A DNA stretch of 64,000 nt from Mytilus californianus. Its lineage: Eukaryota. The notes under the pieces were generated by a model. It worked only from the letters and a program-made list of their open reading frames with translations. It did not search any database and had not been told where the DNA came from. The stretch is taken from assembly GCF_021869535.1 (NCBI RefSeq), contig NW_026262723.1, positions 73,222,001 through 73,286,000 on the forward strand. The letters run 5' to 3'. The translations under genes and the position numbers were made by a program. Numbering within the stretch: position 1 is the stretch's first letter; each line of letters begins with the position of its first letter. Of the stretch, positions 20,465-37,524 are shown piece after piece.

Positions 20465-23400
20465 ATGTCGTCCGACGAGGAATCGGATGAAATCGAAGAT
20501 CAAGAAAAATTAGAAGAAAAAGTAGACTTTACATCGTCCAGACAGGCAAAAAAAGAAGCAAGACTTAATCAAATTATTTTCGAAAACGAACATAAAGCCA
20601 AAATAAGAAAAGTATGCAAACATTTATCACTACTTTGTAGCTACACTTACACTTTTAGTACAGACTACAGTCCAAATAAATCATATAACTTTATCAGCAC
20701 ATCAGCACAAAATGTGCACCATAATTAAGTTACCTTGTTTTGTAACCTCCGTTGCCATAAGGGTTACAAAAGTTACATTGGTTGCACACATGGGAGAAAT
20801 TAACTTTCATATTGCAATGTATTGTTTTTCCAGGTCGCAACATTAACTAACAATTATTCAGTAACATGAACATGATGAATGGGGGTCGGGATCAGGGTTA
20901 TGCATCATGATGACTGATGTACAAATTATGGTTATATTGAAATTATAATTATTTGGTTTTGAGCATTCCTGATCTTGGTAAATCCAGATGCACAAACTTA
21001 AGTGTTTTCATTTTTATATGATTGAGGTTGTTAATCATGTTAATGTTATAGTAGTTATTCTGATTAAATGACATTTTTGACCCAACTTTTGCATTTTCTG
21101 ACAAGCCTTTTGAAATTTATAATGCTTAAGATCTATAAGTAGGAAAAATGATCAGCAAGATCTAAAAATAAATAAGCATAAACAAAATCCTTAATTGTTT
21201 TCTCATCAGTGACATCACTTGCCATCTGTCCTCAGTCATTTTGTACCCCAAATGACATGTTGTAGGGGACAGAATTACACGACTGGCTTCTGTCCATCTA
21301 TCTGGTCTTAGTAAGGGCTCTCATGTGTACAATTCTTGTCAGATTTTTATTAAATTTATATAAAAAAGGTTTTTCATAAGTTATGTCCCTTAAAACATGA
21401 CCAAGGGTAAAAAAAAATATGGGTAAAATAATCATCTATCTTCCATACATGTACCTTTATAGATTGAGAAAATCTGATGGTCAAAAATGTTTATAATGTA
21501 AGAACTTCCAACTGTTCTTTTTCACCAACTTAAAAGCTGAATCACAGTGTGTGGCATGTATAAGTCAACATTGCCTAGTTGTCACCCTTGAATGACAATT
21601 TTTACATATTATTGTGGTTTTATTAAGGAACCACACATGTATATTATATAGAGAGAAGCTTTACATAACAAAATTATCAGAAGGACAATATGTACAAATA
21701 AGTCCATACTACATATAGTTTATGCACAAATACCAGTAAATATTAATGGAGTTAAAGCTTACTTAAAAAGTCTTTGATTTAGAAACAGTTGAACAATTTT
21801 GGGATTGTTTTCTATGTTAGTACCTTTAGACTTAAAGATGACTCTTGAATTTTTACAGGTTTCAAAAATATTAAAGAAAAAAGACCATGATATAACAGAT
21901 GAAGAAAAAGATATTTTAAGACAATCTCCAGAAATAACTAATAGATTGGTTAAATTAAAAGAAAGGAGAGGAACATTAAAACAAAGAGTATTAGAGGTAC
22001 TGCATCTGGTATATGTATATTGACATGTTGTTTTTATTGTATAATAATTATTTTTTCCCTTGTGCAAGAGGGTTGAGCCCAATGGCCAAGCCCATGGTAA
22101 ATGTAATTTTTAGTATGTGTACCATGCTCATTTTGACGTGGCTCATTTCTGTTTTTAACTTGCTTAACCCATAAAAGTAGTCTTAACAGTTACTTGTAGT
22201 CCATCAGTGTGCTTAATAAAACTAAACCAATAATATAAAAATAAGGAGATGTGGTATGATTGCCAATGAGACAATTCTCCACAAGAGACCAAATGACACA
22301 AAAATTAACAACTATAGGTCTTCAACAAAGAGTAAAACGTTAACCCATACCGCATAGTCAGCAATAAAAGGCTCCTAAATGACAAATGTAAAAAATTTCA
22401 AACGAGAAAACTAATGCTGGCCTGATTTATGTACAAAACATTTGGATTGGCAAAGATGTCTTTACAAGAGTTAATTACCTAAAGACATGATGTTATTGCA
22501 AATTTAGTGTACAAATAGAAAAACACCTTGTTCTTTTGTTTCTGACGGATCCATCAGGCAAAATATTTCTGGAGATCTTCTGTAATTCCATAATATTATT
22601 AACATAATTCTCAAGGAATGATTTTTATTGAAGACTGAAATAGAATTTTAGCTAGTCTTTGTACATCAAGTTTATATTTTTTTCAATTTATTTTCACATA
22701 TCTGTGTAGTGGTTACATGATTATGTATGAATGACATTTTGTTATAATTTATTTATGGATAACTGGTTTCCTTTAGAACTCTTTCAGCTTTTAAATAAAA
22801 TAGAAAGTCAACAACACTCATTTTAAGCCACTGGTTGAAAGTTAAATCTCTTGTCTTTAAAGTTTATGTTTACCTCACAGAGATCCTCTTCAGCACTTCG
22901 GCTTTAGTTGATTTAACTAAAGTAATGGTACTATAAGTTGTAACTACTTAGACAATGTTTCCAAAACACAAACTTATGATAAAAGTAGAGATAAGTTACA
23001 GCAGTGTAGTTGACAGTTGTATAATGCCCCACCAGGACAGGACTAGCATCTATGTCAAATCTACTTGATAATTGTATACAATCTTGTTCTAGATTGAAGA
23101 TCCTGTTGAGGAACTGGAGTTGAAATGTGAAGAACTAGCTGAAGCTATTAGACATTCCAATAAAGTTGTTGTATATACAGGTGCTGGTATAAGTACGGTA
23201 AGTTTCTTTCTCAGATCCCTAATATACACACTCCGATATTTAATTAGCTCTCAGTCTGTGTGGATAATTACAATAAGTTTTTTTTCCAAGATCCCTATTA
23301 CACACACTCTGACATTTACCTAGCTCTGTGTGGATAATAGAGAACAACCATAACTATACAAAATTATGTGAATTGGGGACTAGCATATTCAGATTCAGTA

Positions 23401-26400
23401 ATTATAAAGCATAGCCTTTTTAATGTTATGTAAACATGGAACATTATGTTATGTAAATGAGAAAAAATGGTATGATTGCCAATGAGACAACTCTCCAACA
23501 GAGACTAAATGACGTAGAAGTTAACAATTATAGATCACTGTATGGCCTTCAACAATGAGCAAAACTCATAATGCACAGCAACCTATAAATGGCCCCGATA
23601 TGACAAATATAAAACAATTCAAATGAGAAAACTAACGGCCTGATCTATGTACAAAACAATAATAAAAGAACAAATAGGATATACAGCAACAAAAGACAAT
23701 CACTGAATTACAGGCTCCAGACTTGGGACTTAGCTCTCTTTCAAAGGTTTATAAAAAATGGATTGTAATATGGGATATGAATCTGATGGAATTTAGTTAA
23801 AACCAAAAGCTATACTTTAAATATGAAGAAAGTAATGAAACAGCCAGTTTCACCACACAGATTGATTCATTGTTTAAAAGGACCTTTTTGATTATCTACT
23901 GTAAACCAACTTATTTTCGCGACTTTCGCGAGTAGAAAAATAATGCGAAAATAAATAGTCGCGAATATGTAAAACTTGGATCTTTCCTTATTAAACTACA
24001 TCAAGTCAATTAGAAAATTGCGAAATTAAATAGCCGTGAAGTGGACTAGAAAGGGTTAAACGCGAAATAAAGTATCCGCAAAAATAAGTTGGTTTACAGT
24101 ATTTGTTTTGTGTTGCAGTCTTATTGATGTATGCTCTACATTTTGTATTTATGAATTTCTGAATTGACCTGAAAGTAGTAAATGTACTACATGTAGAAGT
24201 CATGTACACACATTTTTCATAATAAAATTTTTACTTTATATAGGCAGCCTCTATACCGGACTACAGGGGACCAAATGGAGTTTGGACACTGCTACAAAAG
24301 GGACAACAACCCAAGTAGGTTTTCTAAAAGCTCACATAATTCAATTGTCTCCCTCTTCCATTTCTTGCAATTCAATTTTCAGCACTATGAATATACTGCA
24401 GAACTATTGAAGTGGCCACAGCTGTATGTCAGATCTTTTTCATGTTTGTAAGATTCCAAACCTTACCTGTTCAATTTCAATCATTCAAATATCTGGTACA
24501 ATTTTATTGTGTGTGTCTTTTGACCTGACAATAAATTATTGAGGATTTGTAAGATAAAGATAATAATGGCATCTTTGTCAAGATAATTACTGTAAAAAAA
24601 TCAAGTTCCAATAAATCCTGGGAGAATAAAGCATATATTGGTCATCCCACAGTAGGGGTTACAAAAATTGGGACAATGTATTGTTATTTTAAAGGGATAG
24701 TAACACAAAAAAACTGGATAAAACAGATAGTTAAAACATTTGACTATATGATATTGATTGTCAACACTCATAGTAAAGCCATTATCTTAAAGACTTACCA
24801 CATAAAATCAACCATGATTAGTAAAGCAGGCGAGACATTTCAGCTTGTTCACTTTTGTTTATCAAATTCTCTTCAATTTTGTATAAAAGCTTTCAATTAT
24901 CAAAATCTTGAAAAACTGCAATGGTTGAGGAATCAATTTTTGGGGAGGTGGGGGCTAATAAAAATATTCCATATTAATAATTTTGGAGTATGGGGTATGT
25001 GAGTTTGCTCTCTAAGAGTTCTATAGTTTTGGCTGTGGCCTCAAAAGGGTAAACACATATGAAATTCAACTGTCTCAAGAAAAGTGAGAATACCGGTACT
25101 CAGATTTCTGAAATCAGCAGAAACAATATTTATCCTTTCCCTCATTGTTCCTCTCCATATCAGATGACATTTCAAATTAAAAGAAAATAAATTTTCAGTA
25201 AATCAAAAATACATGAACTTTGAAGTTAAAATATACAGAAGAATCATACAAAATTAAATCCATTAGTATCATCAATTCTAGCATTGTAAAAAGATAGTCA
25301 TGTGGTCAACACTATTTAGAAAAAGCACTGGGCACTTTTATATTTTTAATTGTCAGATTTGATCACTACAATAGTAGAGGATCATTATGTTTATCATAAA
25401 GTTGTGGATACATCAAAAAATTATTACACATGTTCACTATAATGCAAACGTTTTAATATAAATGTTAAATTAGGATGTTGACCTAGATTTTATGGTTCAC
25501 CTATCATGATAATGTGATAGTGTGAGTGGGATTTATGTCCAAAGGTCACATATTTTTGTTTCACCTGTTATTGAATATTACAGAGCTCAAGATTTATGTG
25601 ATGCTAAACCTACATTGACACATATGAGTATCAAGAAGTTAGAAGATGCAGGGCATGTAAGTATGAAATGAGATAATTTATGAAGTAGCTGATATGGAAT
25701 TTTATTCATTTATTTAACAAAGTCATAGCAGGAATGTCATTCATTACTTTGTGAGATGTTTCTGTTAACAATATCATTCATCTTGTAGTTTCTTGTTTAA
25801 ATCTAAATGTAAAACTTTAGAGATTTAATTCTGGATTATGAGACAACGAATCAATGCAAGAACTGACAAAATACTACATTATACAAAGTATATAAAGTTA
25901 AGTCATTTGTTATGCCAGTAAAGATTTTTAACTTTTGTAGATGTGATGATGATACAGGATAATTAAAGTAGCTCTTGACCAACTCTTTTAAAAGATTCAA
26001 ACAATGTCATGGACCATAAAAACAGGTCAATTTTGATTTTGGTAGTTTTGACATTTACAGTTCAAAAGTCATGCTCCTTAGTGACCTCGAACATTGGTAT
26101 TTCTTTGGTTCCACTAGATAAATAAAATACCACATGACCAAAACTTTTAAGATTTTAACACAATGTTATGAAACATAAAATACAGGTCACATTCAGTTTG
26201 AATTTTGGTTGTAGAATTTACTGTTAAAGAGTTTTTGCAAGCAGGGTTATCAGTGATTACTAGATCCTCTTATTCCAGTTTCTTTTAACTGTTGTTTCAA
26301 AAATATGCATGAATAGTATATGAATACGAATTTGATTCATCAAAATTGATGTATTTGTTGTTTGTTAAGCATCAGTTTCAAATATTACATGTATTTTAAG

Positions 26401-29400
26401 GAGGACCTCAAATTGAAGTCTAAAATAAGAAAATTTATTAAAGTGTGATTAAGAGTTTTCAAGAAAGAAATCATGGCATGATTCGATTCATTATCAAGTT
26501 ATTTTACCTATTTAGATATATCTAACTTCCAGGTAACACATGTTGTATCTCAGAACTGTGATGGTTTACATATGAGAAGTGGTCTTAACAGAAGAAAATT
26601 ATCAGAAATCCATGGAAATATGTACATAGAGGTATGTAAACACGATCGCATTTGGAATCACTAATTTTGCATTGCCCATTTATTCTTTCATCTGTCCTCA
26701 AAATACAGCTGCTGGTGATATCTTGTTGAACTGTTTGACTATTTACTCAGATGAGTACACTATGTTACAAATGGTAATTTTCATCCCTCTGCAATGGAAA
26801 TGTAAATTCTATAGAAAATTGAATTGTAAGTGCTCTCAAGCCTAAATTTCTTGTTTGGTTTTGAATTGAAAATGAAGTTTATCAGCAATGCCTTGGGCAG
26901 TGCCGATCATTCATTTCAACATTTCAATATGTCCCGTTGAAATGTAAGTTCTAGTGAAAATTGCATTGTAAGTGCATTCAAGCCTACATTTCTTGTCAGG
27001 TTTTTGTGAAATTTATATCAAAGGTGTATATCAGCAGGACTTTAGACTGGTTCAATAATCAGTGCAGATCAACTATTTTTACAGGACGTATGCCCCTTGG
27101 AAAAAGAAATTCTCTGGAAAATTGCATTGTCAGCGATTTCACACCTTCATTTCCTGTAGGATATTTTTGAAAAAGTAAAGAACCAAAAAAAATGTATTTA
27201 ATACTGTAAATTCAGAAATTAATGCAAGGTTTTTATTAATGCGAATAATGTGACAAGGTGATTATCGCATTAATAAGACCTCGCATTCTGATATCTCAAT
27301 AATTTCTGAATTTACAGTACTTTTATCCCTCTCCATGAGTGGGGCTAGATTGTATCCACCTTGTCCATCCGTCTGTCCATTCTTCCATCAAATATTTCTG
27401 TCACACCTTTTTCTGATACTACTTTTACCTGTGAGTACATTTAAGAACTTTTGAAAACTTTCTTCCTGTTTGCTGATACTTTAAAATTTTCAATATATTG
27501 AATGAACTTTAAAAAATTTGACATATTTCTCCAGTACAGGAGTTGTAAAATGTGAGCACGTTTTCAACTTGCACATTACATATCTGCCTTGGCTTGTCGG
27601 TCAAGTACAAAGCAGGATTTATTTTCATATCACATTTTCATGTTTACTTCCTCAATATGCATTTAATTTTCTTTTAAACTTTAAAACAGCCATCATCATC
27701 ATCTCAATAATGTTAAGCAAACAAAAAACAATCAATCTATATTACTAAACTTATTTAATGATTCTACTTACTGTCTTTCTCAGATTTGTTACAGTTGCAG
27801 GCCACATCAAGAGTACATCCGACTATTTGATGTGACTGAGAAGACAGGAGTGAGACGTCACCAGACAGACAGGAATTGTCACACCTGTAAACAGCCACTT
27901 AAGGATACTATAGTACACTTTGGGGAGAAGGGAGGGATGAAATGTCCATACAGGTGGAAAGAGGCTGCTAAAGCTGCTGATAGATGTGATATTATCCTGT
28001 GTCTAGGATCTAGTCTCAAGGTTGGTTCTTATATTATCCTATGTATAGGATCTAGTGTCAAGGTTGGTTCTGATATAATCCTGTGTCTAGGATCTAGTCT
28101 AAAGGTTGGTTCTAATATAATCCTGTGTCTAGGATCTAGTCTCAAGGTTGGTTCTGATATAAACCTGTGTCTGGGATCTAGTCTCAAGGTTGGTTCTGAT
28201 ATTTTCCTGTGTCTAGGATCTAGTCTCAAGGTTGGTTCTGATATAATCTTGTGTCTAGGATCTACTCTCGAGGTTGGTTCTGATATGAACCTGTGTCTAG
28301 GATCTAGTCTCAAGGATGTTTCTGATATTATCCTATGTCTAGGATCTAGTCTCAAGGTTGGTTCTGATATTTTCCTGTGTCTAGGTTCTAGTCTCAAGGT
28401 TGGTTCTGATATTATCCTATGTCTAGGATCTAGTCTCAAGGTTGGTTATGATATAATTCTGTGTCTAGGATATAGTCTCGATGTTGGTTATGATATAATT
28501 CTGTGTCTAGGATCTAGTCTCAAGATTGGTTCTGATATAATCCTGTGTCTAGGATCTAGTCTCATGGTTGGTTCTGATATAATCCTATGTCTAGGATCTA
28601 GTCTACAGGTTGGTTCTGGTATCATCCTATGTCTAGGATCTAGTCTCAAGGTTGGTTCTGATATAATCCTGTGTGTAGGATCTAGTGTCAAGGTTGATTC
28701 TGATATAATCCTGTGTCTAGGATCTAATCTCCTGGTTGGTTCTGATAAAATCCTGTGTCTAGGATCTAGTCCCAAGGTTGGTTCTTATATAATCCTGTGT
28801 CTAGGATCTAGTCTCAAGGTTGATTCTGATATAATCTTGTGTCTAGGATCTAGTCTGATGGTTGTTTCTGATATGATTCTGTTTCTAAGATAATATAAAA
28901 GTTAAAAAATTTGAAAGATTGCCAATTAGACAACTCTACATCAGACACCAAATGACAGAGAAGTAAGCAACTATAGGTAGCCGTACAGCCTTTAACAATG
29001 AACAAAACCCATGTCCTGTGTCTAGGATCTTGGCTTATAGTTGGTTCTGATAATACTGATAACACTGTCTCAAGAACATTATTGTTATTTGTAGTTTTGA
29101 TGTTCATATTATCCCCTTTATTGAATTCTTAATAGGCTATATTTTCTGTTATATAGATACTGAAAAAATACTCATGTTTATGGTGTATGGACAGAAAAAT
29201 GAAGAATAGGCCACAATTGTATATAGTTAACTTACAGTGGACACCGAGAGATGATGCCGCTACTATGAAAATCAATGGTAAATTTAAACATATGATGGTC
29301 TTGGGTGCGTGTGAGAAGGAGAGGTCAGATGCCCATGATACAAGATCACATGAAACAACAAGAAGTTCTAAAACTTTCTGTAAAATCAGACCAATAAAAA

Positions 29401-32400
29401 ACAGTATTATATAATTTGGTTTCAATATTAGAAATATTATACTATAGGTTATGAGCTAAGGATATATTCTAACATGACGTTCTTCAAACACTTTGAGTAC
29501 ACACCTGTGGTAAAATATGAATATATTGTTTGGGCTGTTCCGATCGTACTCCCGCATCATATGCTTTTTTATGAATGAGCTACCTGACGTCATAGAACGA
29601 TGACATAAGAATATAAGCATTTTTACGGGAAAATACACGCTTATGAAACCGAAAATCATCACAACAAGGAAACGTAAACAAACGATGCTAAAATGTGTTA
29701 TATAAGACATATAAAAACAATTATCATGTAGATTCATCAAAATCTATCTAAATATGTCATTGTAAATAGTTTATGCATGCCATTTATTCAGTTTGCTCCG
29801 TTCTTTTACGTCAATTTAATAGTGCGTTTATTTATGGGAACGGCAAATAATGCCTTCACCTAGAGCGCTTCAATCCAAAAGAATTGCTGTATTTGTCCTA
29901 TTAGAATCGAAATAATTCATGGGGGCTTGAATATATCGTGATTTTACCACGGGTTGTCCCTTTATGCCGATATTTTACCCCTCGCTATCGCTCAGGGTAA
30001 AATATTTGTCATAAAGGGCCAACCCGTAGTAAAATCACGATATATTCAAGCCCCCATGAATTATTTCTTAATTTTTATATAGAAGACTCATCAGTAAGTT
30101 TTGTCATGAACATGCATGAAATATTTGCCACTGGATATTAAGCAACCAACAATCAATCAATTATCAGTCTGTCAAGGATTCTGTTGTCATACGTTTTAAC
30201 CAGTATAACACTTATATTTCTCAACTTATTTATTATTTCGACCATTCATCCAGTAAGTTCATCATAACTTTCTTGTCAGTTACAAAAACATTTTAATTGT
30301 CTTGCCTTAACAGAGTCAAAAAGTGGTTCATAGGTATTCTGTTTCCAGCGCCGGCGGCAGCATTGTCAACAATGTATTAGTTTTTGATTAGGTCAGTTTA
30401 TGGGGAACCACTAGTAATAGGTCAATGATATTTGGTATGCAGTTGTATCAGCACTGGCACATCTAATTTCCATAGAGATTTTTTGGCCCTGCCAACTTAG
30501 TCATGGTCTATTGACTTTGAAACTTTTGCTTAATTTACATGTATTAGTTTGTGATTAGGTCAGTTTATGGGGAACCACTAGTGGCAGGTCAATGATATTT
30601 GGTATGCGTATGTAATAGCATTGGCACATCTCATTTCCATGGAGATTGTTTGGCCCTGTACCTTCAGTCATGGTCTTTTGACTGAATATTTTGCATAACT
30701 TACTTGTTAAAGTATTGCTATTTTGATTTCAACATTTGCATTGTACTTTCAAAATAAGTCAAAGGTGAGACATATCTCTGTGTCAACAGTTTATTTTACA
30801 TTTGAGTTCTTTTGAATTTGAATTAAAGATATTTATTATCAATGCCTGTTTTAAAATCCATTATCATAAAATCCTCCCCATTTTGTATTGCCTTGACGGA
30901 GTCCAAAAGCGAGACATAGGTATGCTGTTTCAGGTGTAGGAGGTGGCGGCGTCAACAATATATTAGTTTGTGATTAGGTCTAGTTTATGGTGAACCACTA
31001 GTGGTAGGTCAATGATATTTGGGATGCAGTTGTATTAGCATTGGCACATCTCATTACCATGGAGAATATTTGGCCCAGCCCCCTCAGTCATGGTCTATTG
31101 ACTTTGAAACTTTGCTTAATTTACATGTATTAGTTGGTGATCAGGTCAGCTTATTGGGAACCACTAGTGGTATGCAGTTGTTTAAGCATTGGCATATCTC
31201 ATTTCCATGCAGATTATTTGGCCCCGTCCCCTCAGTCATGGTCTATTGGCTTTGAAACTTATGCTTAGTTTTCATGTATTAGTTTTTGATTAGGTCAGTT
31301 TAGGGGGAACCATAAGTGGTAGGTCAATGATAATTGGTATGCAGTTGTATAAGAATTAGCACATCTCATTTTTATGGAGAATATTTGATCCTAACCCCTC
31401 AGTGATTGTCTATTGACTTTGAAACTTTTGCTTAGTTTACATGTATTAGTTTGTGATTAGGTCAGTTTAAGATGAACCACTAATGTTAAGTCAATGATAT
31501 TTGGTATGCGAATGTATTGGCATTTGCAAGTTTCATTTCCATGGAGATTATATAACCCCACCTCCTCATTATAGTTCATTGACTTTGAAACTTTTACTTA
31601 GTTTACAAGTTAATGTTTGTGTTTAGGTTTGTTTAAAGGGAACAACTTATGAAAAGTCAATGGTATTTGGTATGCAGTTGTATTAGCATTGGCACATCTC
31701 ATTTCCATGGAAATTGTTTAGCCCTGTACCTTCAGTTATGGTTCATTGACTTTGAATACTTGCATAACTTACATGTTAAAGTATTGCTATTTTAATTTTA
31801 ACATTTGCATTTTCAAAATAACAAGTAGGCGAGACAATCTCTGTGTTTACAGTTTATTAGATAGGGAATTGTAAATAAATTGCTTTCATAAAAATATGTG
31901 CTATACTTGTCACCTGGATAGCATCTTTATTTTTTTTCAGAATATCATAACGTTTTCATGTAATGAATAATATTAAGATCTTGAATGTATAGAATCGTCA
32001 GACAGGGAATGTCTCTTTCTAGAGGGAATTTGAAGAATGAATACTTTGTTAATGTTTGTACAATGGTCTTCTGACATGGATGCCACTTACTTTCTATTCC
32101 AGTTAACTTTAAAATTCAGTAGAAAAATTTAGTATTTGATATTCAAACCTTGCATAGGTTTGATTGTCAGGAAATTTTACAGTTGCAAACTGCCTTTTAC
32201 TTTGTTTCACTTTGGAAAGTTTTTTTGTTATTTGGAACAATTCAAAAAACAAATTATAGAAAATTTGATAGTACTTTTCATGCTAAACCATAATTTTGAA
32301 ATAGATTTGTACATACTGTACTGTATATAATCTTTTCACCTATTTTGTCCATGTTTTTATTACAGGTCGATGCGATGATGTAATGAGACGAGTGATGAGA

Positions 32401-35400
32401 CATCTTGGTTACTCTATACCTGAGTATTTTGAGTATGTATTGTATATCAATTATCATACCCCCAAAAAGTCTTATATAAATACAATGTAGCTTTGATTTC
32501 TTGTCCCGGTTTGTCTATACTTTTGGTCCTTTTTTGTTGTATCAGCTCTACAATGTTTGTATAAGGTGTTAGGTTTTCAAATATGTTTGCCTGGAGCATC
32601 ACTGAAGAGACATTAATAGTTATTATGCATATCTGGTGCAGTACAAATTGGTACCGTTAATCAGTAAATGTTAGCAGATCATATAAAATTTCTATGGTTA
32701 TTCATTTTGTTAAACCTTTATTTAGAGCAATGTACAAATTAGACTTTAATGATCGAATGATTCATTCACTCACAATATACTGAAAGTACTTCTATTTGTG
32801 GGATACCAAAAGTGTCCAATGAACTATAACAACTGTTGTCCAAATCAAGATATGGAAAGATCCCTATGTAGGTTTGACTACATGAATATGGGCATATAAT
32901 CTAGAGAATACATTGAATATCAGCCAGTGCACGAAAATTGATTCCCATGTATAAAAGTAATTTCACAGTAATATAATCAATAAAGGCCATTATTTGTTGT
33001 CAACCAGTAAATGTTAAGTTTTTGTAGTCCCATTGTACTTTCCATTGAAAATGTAATTATACACAGGTGAAACAAAACATATATAATTAATTTACTTACC
33101 AGAAAAAAAGTGATGAAATCTGTGTAATTTATGACTGAATATTTATGAAATCCAGCCAAACACAATAGATAAAAGGATCTGGAGAATATGTCAATAAAAC
33201 AGCAACCAAACAATACTAAAAGCAAAAGGACATCTCATGTATTCTATTTTATTAAAGTGAAATATTTTCAATTTACACTTGTTTGTACTGATGTTTGTCA
33301 GTATCAGTCTTGTTCAGCCATTTTATCTATCATTGTTAAAGCTTCGTGTTGATCAAATTTACACTTTGATATTGAGGTGTATATCTATCAGTTATTGCAT
33401 ATGTTCATGATATGATCTTTAATCTAGATTTCTTTGAAAGCTACAATATGTATTTCAGCAAAAACTGTAATAGATATGTTGGGAAATATCTTCACAATCA
33501 ACGATAATTGATAACCAAAAATCCCAAGTGATTTAAATACATTGTACTAAATTAACCCCTTTTAGTCGTTATTGTCCTTAAATAACAAATTTTAGCATTT
33601 TTGCCTATTATCTTGAAAACTTTAATAGATAGACAGAGACTGTAAAGAGCAAAAATAGATCTAAAGAAATCTAAAAATGATTGAAACCATTTATTGACTC
33701 CTTTACAGTGATGTAGGAGTTGACTAGTAAGTGTGGGGCATACTTCTGAAGAATAAAAAGCTTCATAGTCTTACTTAGTCAGTGTCCTCTATAATTTTCA
33801 ATTTTTGTGTACAAAAAAAATTTGCCAAAAAATGGTGGGGGGGGGGGGGGGGGCAATTTTGCCCCCTTGCCCCCGGCTCCTACACTATTGCTGTAGAAAT
33901 TTTTGGCTTTTATTTTGAAATCTATTATATATAGACAGAAACTTTGCGCAGCAACAATTCTCAGCTATTTAAGATCTCTATAAATTTATAGAAAATTGTT
34001 GATTTTTTTCTGCTTTTTATGTTAATCAAAATGACATATTTAACAAATGAGGTGATGAGTCTCCTTGGAGCATTAAGGTTGAAGATTAACATCAAATATA
34101 CATAGTTGCTCATAGTGAAATTCATTCTTATAAATCTTAAATTTCTTGTAGGGAAGAAGATCCATTATTTTCTTTAGCAACATCACTTCACGAAGAAGAA
34201 AACGACACTACTAGTAAAAAGATTCTGCTAAAACCAGACATAGAAGAAATAACTAGACATAGAAATTCACAGAATGAAATTCGTAGAAATTCAACAGAAT
34301 CTGAAAGGAATAAAACTTTAGCAAGATTAAGTAACACAGATTTGACTGGTTTAAAAACACTTCCTTCAAGTTCTGTTGCAGGAAGTTCAACAAATTATTC
34401 CATGGGAATAAATACTCAGGAAAAAATAAATACAGAATTAACTGTTGTAAAATCAGAGAAGATTAATGATCAAAATCATTTTATTCATAACCCTTTAGAA
34501 CATCCATTAATTCATCATAACCATGCACTTAAATCAGCGTTGGAAAAAAATCATACTGAGAATTTCTACCGCTATAACGGAATATGGGCAAAATCACCAT
34601 TAATTCCTTACAATCCATATTCTTTACCTCCATATCTACCTGGTGTGCCAAACGGTAGACAACAAATAAAGTTTGGTGAAGTTGCATTTCAGAAGTATGT
34701 TGATCAAGGTGATAATCAAAGGAAAGAGGTTAAAGTTGAACCAAATCTAGATTTATCTACATTTGGTGGAAAGAAACCTAAGCTGGAAAATAACCGTGCC
34801 AAAAATAATGAAGTAAACAAAAATTGTACTAATTCTCATGGCAAAATGAGATTACCGGAAGACATGCAAAAGTTAGAATCTAGAAGCAAAATGGCAATGG
34901 TCCCAAGTAAAGAAAAGTGTGCTGTGAGTCCCAGAAAATCAAAAACAAATTCAATCCGTAATAGTGGAAAATGTAGTCCAGATAGAATAGGTGATACAAA
35001 AATAGGACACACAGATCCTATATCTAATTCTACATCTGTTACACAGAGTAGCAGAGGAAGGAGGGCTAGGAAATCATTCTGTCCAAACTGTCACGGTGTT
35101 AGTGGTGACTGTCCGTGTACCGTACTAGAATCTGTAAAGAAAAGGAAACCACCATCTTGTGGTAAATGTGAAAAACATCCATGTACTTGTCCAAAAACAA
35201 CAACTCTATCTATTTGTTTAATATGTAGAAATTCTCTAAATAAATGTGAATGTAAAACAAACATTTTGGAACATCCCTCCAAATGTACGGCATGCGGATT
35301 GTCAAAAACAGTGTGTAAATGTCAATGTAAAACAAACATTTTGGAACATCCCTCCAAATGTAGTGCATGTGGATTGTCAAAAACAACATGTAAGTGTCAG

Positions 35401-36399
35401 TCTTCCTTCAGTAAGCTTATACTGTGCCAGTTTTGTAGACACACTCCTGACAAATGTAAATGTGCTTTGAATGGCCAGACATTTCTGTTACTGTGCCCTG
35501 TTTGCCATCAGCATAAACATCTGTGCAAATGTGTGCTAAATCATACCTCTTCCTTTACTCAGGGTGCAAATGTGCCAAATTTTACAAACATGTCTAACTT
35601 ACCAATGGCACCTTTAATGCCATTTTTTGACTATGCAAAATTTGCATTTCCAATGAACAATATTTCATCGCTTTACATGCCACAAGTCTTTCAGAATAAT
35701 CTTATGAATGGTCTGCTGCCAAGCAATTATTTAAATGCTTTGTTACCAAGTAGCAATGTTAATCCTATGTTACCTAGCAATAGATTAACTGGTTTACAGC
35801 AGGATAAAGTTCTCAACGGAGCATATAGTGCTAGAAATGTCAATAGTTTGGTACCAGTTAATTATGTGACAAATGCATTGAAGGTAGAACCAATATTACA
35901 AGATCATTCATACTTAAATAAAGAACAGATGCAATCATTATCTCCTAACTGTGATAAACATTACCAAAGATCTCAAACTGAGAAACAGACAGTCGAAAGT
36001 GTAGCTACAAAAACGGGTTTAAAGACTGTAGAAAGAATACCTACAAGAACAGGTCTGATGACCGAAAGTATATCTACAAGAACAAGTCTGAAGAGATGTT
36101 ATAGTTATGTAGATGATATTCAAAAAGCAGAAGAGGACATTGTTTCAGAAACTTCTCCAAGAAAATGTAATGTTAATCATTCCAAGATCCAGAAAAAAGA
36201 GCCTGTAGCAATCAAAAGTACAGAATCATCCAATCCTATCGTTATAGATATTGAAGAAGAAACTGAGCAGTGTGAGAGTGAAAAAGTATGTCAAGGTGAT
36301 AACGAGAAAGAGGATCAAGAAAAACCTAAACTAATGAGGAGCATGTCCGTTCCAGGATGGTTTGGAAAAGGTCTCAATCTTCGAAAGAAGCGTAGATAG
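20465..36399 (+). CDS. SIRT7: NAD-dependent protein deacylase sirtuin-7, about 1101 aa; exons 20465-20611, 21859-21996, 23093-23197, 24244-24314, 25584-25656, 26533-26631, 27784-28020, 29157-29277, 32366-32432, 34152-36399
   Basis: Sirtuin motifs [10 protein letters not shown]|[41 protein letters not shown], zinc CxxC pairs, [16 protein letters not shown]|[15 protein letters not shown]|RCDDVM, DPLFSLA and the class-IV C-terminal PGWFGKG..RKKRR. All introns are GT-AG and phase-compatible; the CDS totals 3306 nt. Confidence 0.95.
23899..24099. mobile_element. TA-flanked MITE (Tc1/mariner-like ends) in SIRT7 intron 3
   Basis: TA|CTGTAAACCAACTTATTTTCGCG ... CGCAAAAATAAGTTGGTTTACAG|TA. Confidence 0.85.
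27204..27317. mobile_element. Short TA-flanked MITE in SIRT7 intron 6
   Basis: TA|CTGTAAATTCAGAAATTA ... TAATTTCTGAATTTACAG|TA. Confidence 0.85.
27988..28890 (+). repeat. 42-bp tandem array built from the SIRT7 exon 7/intron 7 junction (native unit, 20 full copies and one partial)
   Basis: Unit GTTGGTTCT GATATAATCCTGTGTCTAGGATCTAGTCTCAAG equals 9 nt of intron plus the last 33 nt of exon 7 ([14 protein letters not shown]). 28021-28860 is exactly 20 x 42 nt. Confidence 0.97.
29909..30067. mobile_element. Near-perfect foldback (palindromic) MITE in SIRT7 intron 8
   Basis: Arms of ~72 bp (gaaataattcatgggggcttgaatatatcgtgattttac...) flank a ~14-nt loop with few mismatches. Confidence 0.85.
30300..31860 (+). 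mobile_element. Two adjacent Helentron-type elements (~30300-30795 and ~30885-31860) with ~150-167-bp internal tandem units
   Basis: Both start ttgcctt.ac.gagtc.aaaag, carry a GGC microsatellite and repeated tgtattagtttgtgattaggtcag cores, and end aggtgagaca/aggcgagaca.tctctgtgt..acagttt. Confidence 0.75.
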
Positions 36400-37524
36400 T
36401 AATGAATGATATTTAATGTATTTTTATATACAAAATGTTTATATTCAAGTCATTCAGGGATTTTTGTAATAATTTATATGAATATGTTTTTTTGTTTAAT
36501 TGTATGGAAGTTTGGTTTGAATTGTATGGTTAATTTTCTTGTTAAAAAGAAGAAAATACTATAAGCCAATTAATTTTCATGTGTAGAAAAATTGTGCGTA
36601 TATAAATTGTCTTGGTACATCACCTAAATTTGAAAATAACGAAAAATAGATAACTAATAATCCAGCTAAAAAAGGCTAAATGCCAAAAAGTATCCATGAA
36701 AATTAGTTGGTTTTATATTAATAAGTTTATGGTTTTGATAAAACTGACATACTGCAGCGCAGAATTAATTGTATTGAATTATTAACTATGTAAATAACCA
36801 ACAGTACAGCCTACTGGGTAGGTTATGGTAACATACTATGTAGAATTTACCTGTTACTAACAGAATAATGTAGCATGCATGTTAGATGTTAATGATCCTA
36901 TTTTCTGGTGTCGATTTTTGCCTTCTCTTACAGTTGTTGCTGTGTTCAAGACATAGATGCCACTTTATCGAATGTTTTTGTATTTTTTGGCTGATAAATG
37001 ACAGTAATTTTGGTGTCAACTTTCACTATGTGTAAAAGGTTATCAGATTAGGTACAATTTAGATTTATTACCTTTGAAAGACTATTGGTACATGTTATAA
37101 AAGTAAATTAGTTTCATTTCAGTTGGAAGCATCAGATCAGGCCCATATTCATAGTCATGCTTCATTGACTTTAGAATTTCATTGTTCAAAAGTTTTTTTA
37201 TCAATTCATAATTTATGGTAGATTACTGATTAGAATACTGTTGCAGATGTTCCTTGCATCTCATCTGCAAGAAGTATATGCTCATTTTTTAGACATTTAC
37301 TAGTTTAATGTTTAATAATTCAAAAGCAAAAGATGAAAAAGGGAAGAATGCTGTGTAAGATTAGGGAATAAAAAATGAAAATCAATATAAATAAAAAATG
37401 TGGGTATTTTACAGTGAGACAGCAACGTGACATAACAAATGTCTATTAATACTTTCTAGTTAAGGTAAAATTTCTACAAACAATTCTTATTCTCATTGCA
37501 GATGGACTGTTAATGTTATAGTCC

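What the first reader, a model, noticed from the sequence alone, without database searches (positions are those of the whole stretch)
35080..35532. SIRT7 carries a large C-terminal insertion with seven CxxC-x(4-6)-CxC modules
Seen: the last exon encodes 748 aa between the conserved DPLFSLA and the terminal PGWFGKG..KKRR. Within it, 151 aa hold 29 Cys as CPNC-x6-CPC, CGKC-x4-CTC, CLIC-x6-CEC, CTAC-x6-CKCQC, CSAC-x6-CKC, CQFC-x6-CKC and CPVC-x6-CKC. Established: human SIRT7 is 400 aa with no such region; CxC/CKC clusters typify metallothioneins; and C-x2-C-x6-C-x-C occurs at the N-terminus of DTW-domain proteins such as E. coli TapT. Inference: a lineage-specific metal-binding array may make this deacylase metal- or redox-responsive, or give it a new nucleic-acid or protein-binding arm.
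Basis: partly seen in the sequence, partly recalled or inferred. Interest (0 to 1): 0.72.

Follow-up and report, generated by a model that had tools for sequence, protein, structure and literature searches.

The report
Zinc-knuckle array in mussel SIRT7 tail
The California mussel's SIRT7 (a nuclear deacylase enzyme) carries seven tandem four-cysteine units in its tail. They are expressed, conserved, probably bind zinc, and were multiplied in mussels from the single unit found in scallops, oysters and an ark shell. What they do is untested.

Summary
Window 35080-35532 (+) encodes 151 aa with 29 Cys, arranged as seven C-x2-C-x4/6-C-x-C modules. They lie in the 748-codon last exon of Mytilus californianus SIRT7.

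- **Expression:** RNA reads and contigs join exon 9 to this exon (32432>34152, GT..AG). They cover the exon with no internal splice.
- **Conservation:** The array occurs in M. edulis, M. trossulus and two deeper mussel-type lineages. All 24 core Cys are invariant, and dN/dS is about 0.25.
- **Turnover:** Module 4 varies from one to three copies. It arose by independent 75-bp and 51-bp tandem duplications.

- **The long insertion is not lineage-specific.** Protostome SIRT7 tails run from 218 to 1540 aa.
- **The module is not new in mussels.** Scallops, oysters and the ark shell carry one such unit where mussel module 6 sits.

No Pfam family or solved structure matches the array. The identical spacing in E. 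coli TapT binds one Zn through its four Cys.

Most likely the array is a basic string of independent Zn(Cys)4 knuckles. It would extend the nucleic-acid-binding tail of SIRT7. A metal- or redox-sensor role is not excluded.

The parts
20465..32432 (+). SIRT7 exons 1-9 (N-terminal helix and SIR2 catalytic domain); exon 9 ends at 32432 and is followed by GT
   Evidence: tblastn of the annotated protein P0001 on the window finds 10 blocks. Pfam SIR2 is found. The best solved relative is human SIRT7.
34152..36399 (+). Exon 10, the last coding exon: 748 codons plus a stop at 36397-36399; acceptor AG at 34150-34151
   Evidence: The frame is open. The joint 32432>34152 (GT..AG) appears in raw RNA reads X21 and in contigs of X1 and X2. 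Cover by contigs is colinear and nearly continuous, with no internal joint.
35080..35532 (+). Cys array: seven C-x2-C-x4/6-C-x-C modules (29 Cys in 151 aa), net charge about +16
   Evidence: All 24 core Cys are invariant in three deep lineages.
35080..35118 (+). Module 1 (CPNC-x6-CPC), preceded by the invariant GRRxRKxF
35158..35190 (+). Module 2 (CGKC-x4-CTC); the loop is x4 or x6 depending on lineage
35215..35253 (+). Module 3 (CLIC-x6-CEC)
35284..35322 (+). Module 4a (CTAC-x6-CKC), followed by the extra Cys codon at 35326-35328
35359..35397 (+). Module 4b (CSAC-x6-CKC), the recent duplicate of 4a
35425..35463 (+). Module 5 ([13 protein letters not shown]), the best conserved module
35494..35532 (+). 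Module 6 (CPVC-x6-CKC), positional counterpart of the single module in other pteriomorph bivalves
   Evidence: Alignment A3.
35241..35399 (+). 75-bp tandem repeat, 2.1 copies, 90 % matches; it duplicates the linker plus module 4
   Evidence: Tandem Repeats Finder. RNA contigs break only here. M. edulis has a 51-bp unit at the same place.
35902..35916 (+). DHSYL, core of the bivalve-wide tail motif DH[SCF]YL..QM..LSP
   Evidence: Invariant in A1 and A3. Present in most bivalve SIRT7 tails: pteriomorphs, unionids and Solemya, but not the heterodonts scanned.
36337..36396 (+). Conserved SIRT7 C-terminal tail [13 protein letters not shown] followed by a basic run
   Evidence: It aligns to the human GWFGRG tail. 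The GW[FY]G core with a basic run is present in every protostome SIRT7 scanned; RSxSVP before it is mainly bivalve.

Best explanation
This is a real, transcribed and selectively maintained part of the mussel SIRT7 protein. It is a tandem array of six core four-cysteine modules; module 4 is present in one to three copies, giving 6-8 modules in all. Each module most likely folds round one Zn2+ as an independent Zn(Cys)4 knuckle. The array arose in the mussel-type lineage by serial tandem duplication of a single knuckle that other pteriomorph bivalves carry at the same place in the SIRT7 C-terminal tail. It is still changing copy number by unequal crossing-over. It sits inside the segment that in human SIRT7 is the disordered, basic, nucleic-acid-binding and DNA-activating tail, and it is itself strongly basic. 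The most likely role is therefore a multivalent nucleic-acid or chromatin-binding arm that tunes where, or how strongly, the deacylase is engaged. Shown here: presence, expression, conservation, duplication history and the absence of any known domain match. Inferred: Zn binding (from the TapT precedent) and nucleic-acid binding (from charge and context).
For: Expression: the exon 9 to exon 10 joint and colinear cover of the exon appear in RNA reads and contigs. A full-length intronless 960-aa mRNA contig carrying the array exists in a second lineage. Constraint: dN/dS for the array is 0.26 (M. californianus vs M. edulis) and 0.25 (L002 vs L006). Cys columns are invariant in 24 of 24 cases against 29 of 90 non-Cys columns, Fisher P = 2.8e-10. 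Origin: modules are orthologous by position across lineages. Other pteriomorphs have one CxxC-x7-9-CxC aligned with module 6. Independent 75-bp and 51-bp duplications affect module 4. Independent units: totals of 6, 7 and 8 modules are all tolerated, and the module 2 loop is x4 or x6. Zn precedent: TapT has CXXC-X6-CXC, holds about 1 Zn by ICP-MS with no Fe-S cluster, lies in a basic RNA-recognition extension (PMC7026641), and coordinates Zn with C31/C34/C41/C43 in the crystal structure (PMC12630136). Context: net charge is +13 to +20. Human SIRT7 aa 363-400 is an IDR with an NLS, reported there as predicted to bind nucleic acids and to mediate activation by DNA (PMC11790868). The insertion maps between human residues 364 and 377.
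Against: There is no direct evidence of metal or nucleic-acid binding. The AlphaFold2 model of the array was uninformative (mean pLDDT 42). The resemblance to TapT is one of spacing only, not homology. RNA depth is low (24 raw reads), so minor isoforms that skip the array cannot be excluded. The taxa of the deeper lineages (P0005-P0008, P0042) are not named by the tools.
Confidence: 0.55

Rival explanations
1. Metal- or redox-sensing (metallothionein-like) segment: the Cys-rich array binds variable amounts of Zn, Cd or Cu, or is reversibly oxidised. This would couple metal or oxidative status to SIRT7 activity in a metal-accumulating animal.
For: Cys makes up 19-21 % of the array and CKC motifs are frequent.
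Against: The spacing is strictly periodic, with 8-13-residue linkers and conserved non-Cys residues such as RHTPDK. The array contains 8 His and 4 aromatic residues. No metallothionein family hit appears even at E up to 10. The ancestral state is a single 4-Cys unit, which cannot form an MT-type cluster.
Confidence: 0.12
2. Protein-protein interaction platform: the knuckles recruit partner proteins (chromatin or nucleolar factors) rather than nucleic acids.
For: Small Zn modules often mediate protein contacts (general knowledge). The same tail carries several conserved short linear motifs, including DHSYL, RSxSVP and an acidic I/V-rich run. That pattern suggests a docking region.
Against: The high net positive charge and the position in a tail known to bind nucleic acids favour nucleic acids. 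No partner is known.
Confidence: 0.2
3. Tolerated repeat expansion with little function of its own: a duplicated motif drifting in a disordered tail.
For: Copy number of module 4 varies between close species. Tail length is very plastic across protostomes.
Against: All 24 core Cys and many flanking residues are invariant across lineages with dS above 1. The array's dN/dS of 0.1-0.26 is as low as or lower than the rest of the tail.
Confidence: 0.08
4. Annotation or assembly artefact: a retained intron or a mis-joined gene.
For: None was found. The only caveat is low RNA depth.
Against: A spliced joint leads into the exon and RNA contigs are colinear. The ORF is uninterrupted in five independent loci, each running from E[ED]P[LI]F[ST]L to PGWFGKG. 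A full-length mRNA contig exists in another lineage.
Confidence: 0.02

Closest known systems
Human SIRT7 C-terminal tail (aa 363-400)
   Same: It occupies the same position, after the DP[IL]FSLA helix and before GWFG[RK]G plus a basic run. It is basic and disordered, carries an NLS, and is reported to mediate nucleic-acid binding and activation by DNA.
   Different: The human tail has about 12-20 residues where the mussel has about 700, and it has no Cys modules.
SIRT7 of other pteriomorph bivalves (Argopecten, Pecten, Mizuhopecten, Ylistrum, Saccostrea, Tegillarca)
   Same: They have the same gene and the same tail landmarks: TTSKKIL, one Cys4 unit, DHCYLNKxQMQxLSP and [13 protein letters not shown]. 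Their single unit aligns with mussel module 6.
   Different: They have one CxxC-x7-9-CxC instead of 6-8 units of x4/x6. They lack the mussel-specific blocks FGEVxFxKY..GDN, NHTSS and DYAKFxFP.
E. coli TapT/YfiP N-terminal zinc finger (CXXC-X6-CXC)
   Same: The Cys spacing is identical. The four Cys bind one Zn in the crystal structure (PDB 9kyt). The motif lies in a very basic extension needed for tRNA modification.
   Different: It is a single copy, fused to a DTW/SPOUT-like domain, and bacterial. No sequence homology is detectable and no DTW hit appears.
Fungal Zn2Cys6 binuclear cluster (Gal4/RSC3/RSC30 type)
   Same: The half-site C-x2-C-x6-C has Arg after the second Cys and Lys before the third. 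RSC30/RSC3 are the best solved-structure matches to the array profile.
   Different: The matches are not significant (E 0.088-0.26; Pfam Zn_clus E 5.7, 7.6 bits against a cut-off of 21). Each mussel module has its own fourth Cys, and odd module numbers argue against obligatory pairing.
Tandem CCHC zinc-knuckle arrays (CNBP-type; from my own knowledge)
   Same: Both have about seven short Zn knuckles separated by roughly 10-residue basic linkers. CNBP-type arrays bind single-stranded nucleic acids, so this is a functional analogue.
   Different: The ligand set and spacing differ (C-x2-C-x4-H-x4-C). No zf-CCHC hit appears.
Metallothioneins
   Same: Both are Cys-rich and have CxC and CKC motifs.
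   Different: The array has lower Cys content, periodic modules with long linkers, and His and aromatic residues. No MT family hit appears.

Membership tests
SIRT7 (class IV sirtuin) | SIR2 catalytic domain | tested here: met
   Pfam PF02146, E 3.3e-24. The catalytic HGN motif aligns with human SIRT7.
SIRT7 (class IV sirtuin) | Closer to SIRT7 than to SIRT6, including the N-terminal helix | tested here: met
   Human SIRT7 9gmk scores E 1.9e-127 over aa 25-381. The best SIRT6 hit scores 1.7e-50 over the core only.
SIRT7 (class IV sirtuin) | C-terminal GWFG[KR]G followed by a basic run | tested here: met
   [15 protein letters not shown] lies at 36352-36396. It aligns to human GWFGRGCTKRTKRK and is shared by every protostome SIRT7 scanned.
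TapT/YfiP-type CXXC-X6-CXC zinc finger | Spacing C-x2-C-x6-C-x-C with four conserved Cys | tested here: met
   Six of seven modules have it; module 2 has x4. The Cys are invariant. The TapT spacing was verified.
TapT/YfiP-type CXXC-X6-CXC zinc finger | Association and homology with a DTW domain | tested here: not met
   No DTW or other Pfam hit appears in the exon or array at E up to 10.
TapT/YfiP-type CXXC-X6-CXC zinc finger | One Zn bound by the four Cys | not testable with these tools
   The AF2 model has no metal and pLDDT 42. ICP-MS or a structure is needed.
Fungal Zn2Cys6 (Pfam Zn_clus) | Significant match to PF00172 or to solved Zn2Cys6 domains | tested here: not met
   Zn_clus scores E 5.7, 7.6 bits against a cut-off of 21. 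RSC30/RSC3 score E 0.088-0.26.
Metallothionein | MT family profile match; about 30 % Cys; lack of His and aromatic residues | tested here: not met
   No MT hit. Cys is 19-21 %, with 8 His and 4 aromatic residues.
CCHC zinc knuckle / CXXC / Tesmin-CXC domains | Profile match to the respective Pfam families | tested here: not met
   No hits at E up to 10 for the array or for two-module pieces.

The most novel reading that the evidence does not exclude
The array is a previously undescribed type of tandem Zn(Cys)4 domain that gives mussel SIRT7 a new regulatory input. One version is occupancy-dependent sensing of Zn, Cd or oxidants, tying chromatin deacylation to metal or redox load in a metal-accumulating sentinel animal. 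The other is sequence- or structure-specific recognition of a nucleic-acid target such as rDNA or rRNA. In both cases copy number would be tuned by ongoing unequal crossing-over.
Probability: 0.12. Interest if true: 0.7.

Novelty: new variant of a known kind. Interest (0 to 1): 0.4.

Why it matters
SIRT7 is activated and targeted through its disordered basic tails, and how those tails evolve is hardly studied outside vertebrates. This is a clear natural case in which a single small Cys4 unit in the tail was amplified into a conserved 6-8-unit array while the catalytic core stayed about 60 % identical to human. If the units bind Zn and nucleic acids, the mussel enzyme offers a built-in comparison for testing how tail valency controls class IV sirtuin activation: one knuckle in scallop or oyster against seven in mussel. 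If the units respond to metals or oxidants, the array would link metal load to chromatin regulation in a widely used biomonitoring animal. The result also corrects the idea that the long insertion is a mussel peculiarity; it is the protostome norm.

Tried and rejected
- **AlphaFold2:** the array modelled with an 8-row alignment gave mean pLDDT 42 and pTM 0.16. It was unusable, so no fold search was run.
- **Pfam scans:** scans of the whole exon, the array and two-module pieces at E up to 10 gave only sub-threshold noise: Intu_longin_1, KAsynt_C_assoc, and Zn_clus at E 5.7.
- **Solved structures:** the array profile against PDB sequences gave only non-significant RSC30/RSC3 Zn2Cys6 matches.
- **Profile search:** the whole insertion against 1.84 billion representative proteins gave 17 hits. 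Only the three mussel-type clusters have a best-scoring match that reaches the array. The others match best from profile position 398 onwards, past the array, and the named ones are bivalve SIRT7.
- **Literature:** searches for the motif notation found nothing, and searches on mollusc SIRT7 found no description of this array.
- **Taxa of the deeper lineages:** sample accessions for P0005-P0008 were not found in papers, so I call them mussel-type without naming species.
- **M. trossulus DNA:** P0002 is not on record in the contig index, so M. edulis (L005) was used for dN/dS.
- **Readings rejected:**
  - Retroviral Gag CCHC knuckles: wrong ligand pattern and no hit.
  - A fused antimicrobial Cys-rich peptide gene: the array is in frame, in a nuclear enzyme, and deeply conserved.
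  - A retained intron: spliced RNA contigs are colinear with the exon.
- **Spliced model:** Full-length searches used the database protein P0001 returned.
Full report
**What is at the coordinates.** The window comes from Mytilus californianus. The last exon is 100 % identical to NCBI protein LOC127709244 (P0001, 1101 aa). A tblastn of P0001 places ten coding blocks on the + strand between 20465 and 36399. The final exon runs from 34152 (acceptor AG at 34150-34151) to the stop at 36397-36399. It is open for 748 codons, from EEDPLFSLA to [15 protein letters not shown].

Window 35080-35532 translates to 151 aa with 29 Cys. The rest of the exon has 8 Cys in 597 aa. None of 20000 composition-preserving shuffles of the 151 aa gave even four matches. 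The pattern occurs nowhere else in any frame of the window.

**Is it SIRT7?** Pfam finds a SIR2 domain. The best solved relative is human SIRT7 (9gmk), at E 1.9e-127 over residues 25-381 of the mussel protein. This includes the SIRT7-specific N-terminal helix. SIRT6 reaches only 1.7e-50 over the core. The human sequence aligns up to DPIFSLATPL...SRKSL and again at GWFGRG plus the basic run. The mussel insertion therefore lies between human residues about 364 and 377. That is inside the segment missing from the cryo-EM model (aa 363-400). The authors describe it as a disordered tail with an NLS, predicted to bind nucleic acids and reported to mediate activation by DNA (PMC11790868).

**Is it expressed as one exon?**
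- Raw stranded RNA-seq reads (X21) and contigs of two further runs (X1, X2) show the joint 32432>34152, with GT..AG ends.
- One X1 contig runs from exon 9 straight to 35278. Others cover 35258-35353 and 35333-36445.
- No joint inside the exon was seen. In the best-covered run (X1) the only contig breaks fall at the 75-bp tandem repeat.
- Raw-read depth is low (24 reads), so rare isoforms are not excluded.
- Independently, a 3576-nt Logan contig from another lineage (L007) carries an uninterrupted 960-codon ORF. It encodes the catalytic domain, a six-module array and the tail, so it is an mRNA.

**Conservation.**
- The word search found M. trossulus and M. edulis orthologues at about 83 % identity. 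It also found three clusters at 39-42 % identity from Logan, ENA and JGI assemblies: P0005-P0007 and P0008.
- In every fetched locus the ORF starts at E[ED]P[LI]F[ST]L and ends at PGWFGKG. The insertion is therefore in the same exon everywhere.
- All 24 Cys of six core modules are invariant in alignments A1 and A2, together with flanks such as GRRxRKxF and NHTSS.
- Among three deep lineages, Cys columns are invariant in 24 of 24 cases against 29 of 90 for non-Cys columns (Fisher P = 2.8e-10).
- Nei-Gojobori dN/dS for the array is 0.26 (M. californianus vs M. edulis, dS 0.30) and 0.25 (L002 vs L006). This is similar to or lower than the rest of the tail.
- Modules match best by position across lineages, so the six-module core predates their divergence.

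**Ongoing turnover.** Module 4 (CxxCGLSKTxCKC) is present once in the P0005-7/P0042 lineage and twice in M. californianus, M. edulis and P0008. It is present three times in M. trossulus. In M. californianus the duplicate is a 75-bp unit (2.1 copies, 90 % matches). That unit also copied the last Cys of module 3, which explains the odd CKCQC and the 29th Cys. In M. edulis the unit is 51 bp, so the two duplications were independent. Totals of 6, 7 and 8 modules are all tolerated, and the loop of module 2 is x4 or x6. This argues that the modules act as independent units rather than obligatory pairs.

**How far does it reach?** A profile of the whole insertion was searched against 1.84 billion representative proteins. 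It gave only 17 hits at E up to 0.001.
- Only the three mussel-type clusters have a best-scoring match that reaches the array.
- The other hits match best from profile position 398 onwards, mostly from about 530, which is past the array.
- Where named, these are bivalve SIRT7: Tegillarca, Solemya, Argopecten, Saccostrea and Sinanodonta.

A search with the catalytic domain then listed long SIRT7 proteins from many protostomes, and I scanned their tails.
- **Tail length:** the tail between the DPxF-type motif that closes the catalytic domain and PGW[FY]GKG is 218-1540 aa in gastropods, cephalopods, Lingula, annelids, a myriapod, crustaceans and insects. The large insertion is the protostome norm, not a mussel feature.
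- **Single module in pteriomorphs:** scallops (four species), oysters (two Saccostrea species plus unnamed oyster-like assembly contigs) and the ark shell each have exactly one CxxC-x7-9-CxC. It lies about 70 aa upstream of a conserved DHCYLNKxQMQxLSP motif and aligns with mussel module 6 (A3).
- **Other bivalves:** heterodonts and unionids have a different conserved unit, C..C.FL..YG...K..C..C.
- **Other groups:** none of the other groups scanned has either unit.

The mussel array is thus a lineage-specific amplification, from one unit to six or more, of a pre-existing bivalve tail knuckle.

**What is the module?**
- No Pfam family matches the exon, the array or two-module pieces at E up to 10. 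This covers metallothioneins, zf-CCHC, zf-CXXC, Tesmin-CXC and DTW.
- The best solved-structure matches to the array profile are the Zn2Cys6 domains of yeast RSC30 and RSC3, which share the half-site C-x2-C-R..K-C. These are not significant (E 0.088-0.26; Pfam Zn_clus E 5.7).
- AlphaFold2 gave an unusable model (pLDDT 42).

- E. coli TapT has CQRC-x6-CLC at residues 31-43.
- The protein holds about 1 Zn by ICP-MS and no Fe-S cluster.
- The motif lies in a very basic N-terminal extension, and Cys-to-Ser changes abolish or nearly abolish tRNA modification (PMC7026641).
- The 2.05-Å structure shows Zn coordinated by C31, C34, C41 and C43 (PMC12630136).

This is a precedent for the spacing, not evidence of homology.

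**Most likely mechanism.** Each module probably binds one Zn through its four Cys. The array has a net charge of +13 to +20 and few hydrophobic residues. It sits in the tail that mediates nucleic-acid binding and activation in human SIRT7. I therefore favour a multivalent nucleic-acid or chromatin-binding arm.

I give about 0.9 to the descriptive part, about 0.7 to Zn binding and about 0.4 to nucleic-acid binding. Overall confidence is 0.55.

The rivals are these:
- **Protein-docking platform (0.2):** cannot be excluded here.
- **Metal or redox sensor (0.12):** weakened by the periodic architecture, the conserved non-Cys residues and the single-unit ancestor.
- **Tolerated repeat drift (0.08):** contradicted by the invariant Cys and the low dN/dS.
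- **Artefact (0.02):** contradicted by the spliced, colinear RNA.

**Novelty and verdict.** I found no paper that describes this array or the bivalve tail knuckle. It is a new variant of known kinds, namely SIRT7 C-terminal tails and tandem small Zn modules. It is real and tidy, but of moderate interest until a function is shown.

**Limits.**
- The taxa of P0005-P0008 and P0042 are not given by the tools.
- RNA depth is low.
- No metal, binding or structural test was possible.
Full-length searches used the database protein returned.

Noticed in passing
window 35902-35916 (DHSYL), within the conserved block at about 35890-35960: The motif DH[SCF]YL-x2-3-QM-x2-LSP is invariant in mussel-type tails. 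It is present in scallop, oyster, ark-shell, Solemya and unionid SIRT7. Its core fits the [DE]HxY HCF-1-binding-motif consensus (my own knowledge), which would link SIRT7 to HCF-1. This is untested.
   Followed up: partly
window 36337-36396: The residues directly before GWFGKG read R-S-x-S-V-P in most bivalves. This fits the 14-3-3 mode-1 consensus RSxpSxP (my own knowledge). Human SIRT7 lacks it.
   Followed up: no
window 36235-36261: PIVIDIEEE (SSPI[IV][IV]ID followed by an acidic run) is conserved in mussel-type tails and looks like a SUMO-interaction motif.
   Followed up: no
P0056, P0061, P0063, P0067, P0017, P0057 (heterodont and unionid SIRT7 tails): A different conserved four-Cys unit, C..C.FL..YG...K..C..C (x12 spacing), replaces the CxxC...CxC unit of pteriomorphs. 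P0019, P0020 and P0022 are probably last-exon ORFs of similar genes.
   Followed up: partly
window 27832-28893: An open frame after exon 7 is built of about 20 repeated [13 protein letters not shown]-type units. The annotated protein splices past it.
   Followed up: partly
window 33564-33709 (intron 9), and 33838-33856: A short element with very high depth in RNA contigs (up to 267x in X1) and a fixed T>A at 33622 points to a transcribed repeat family. A poly-G run follows nearby.
   Followed up: no
P0004 (M. edulis SIR2L7) / L005: The M. edulis gene model lacks the exon-3 residues that include the GAGIST NAD-binding motif. This is probably an annotation gap rather than biology.
   Followed up: no
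P0002 vs P0003 (M. trossulus isoforms); window about 36010-36100: The two isoforms differ by one 11-aa TGLTTESISPR unit. The M. californianus tail has the related KTGLKT / RTGLMT / RTSLK repeats, which make a second small tandem repeat in the tail.
   Followed up: no
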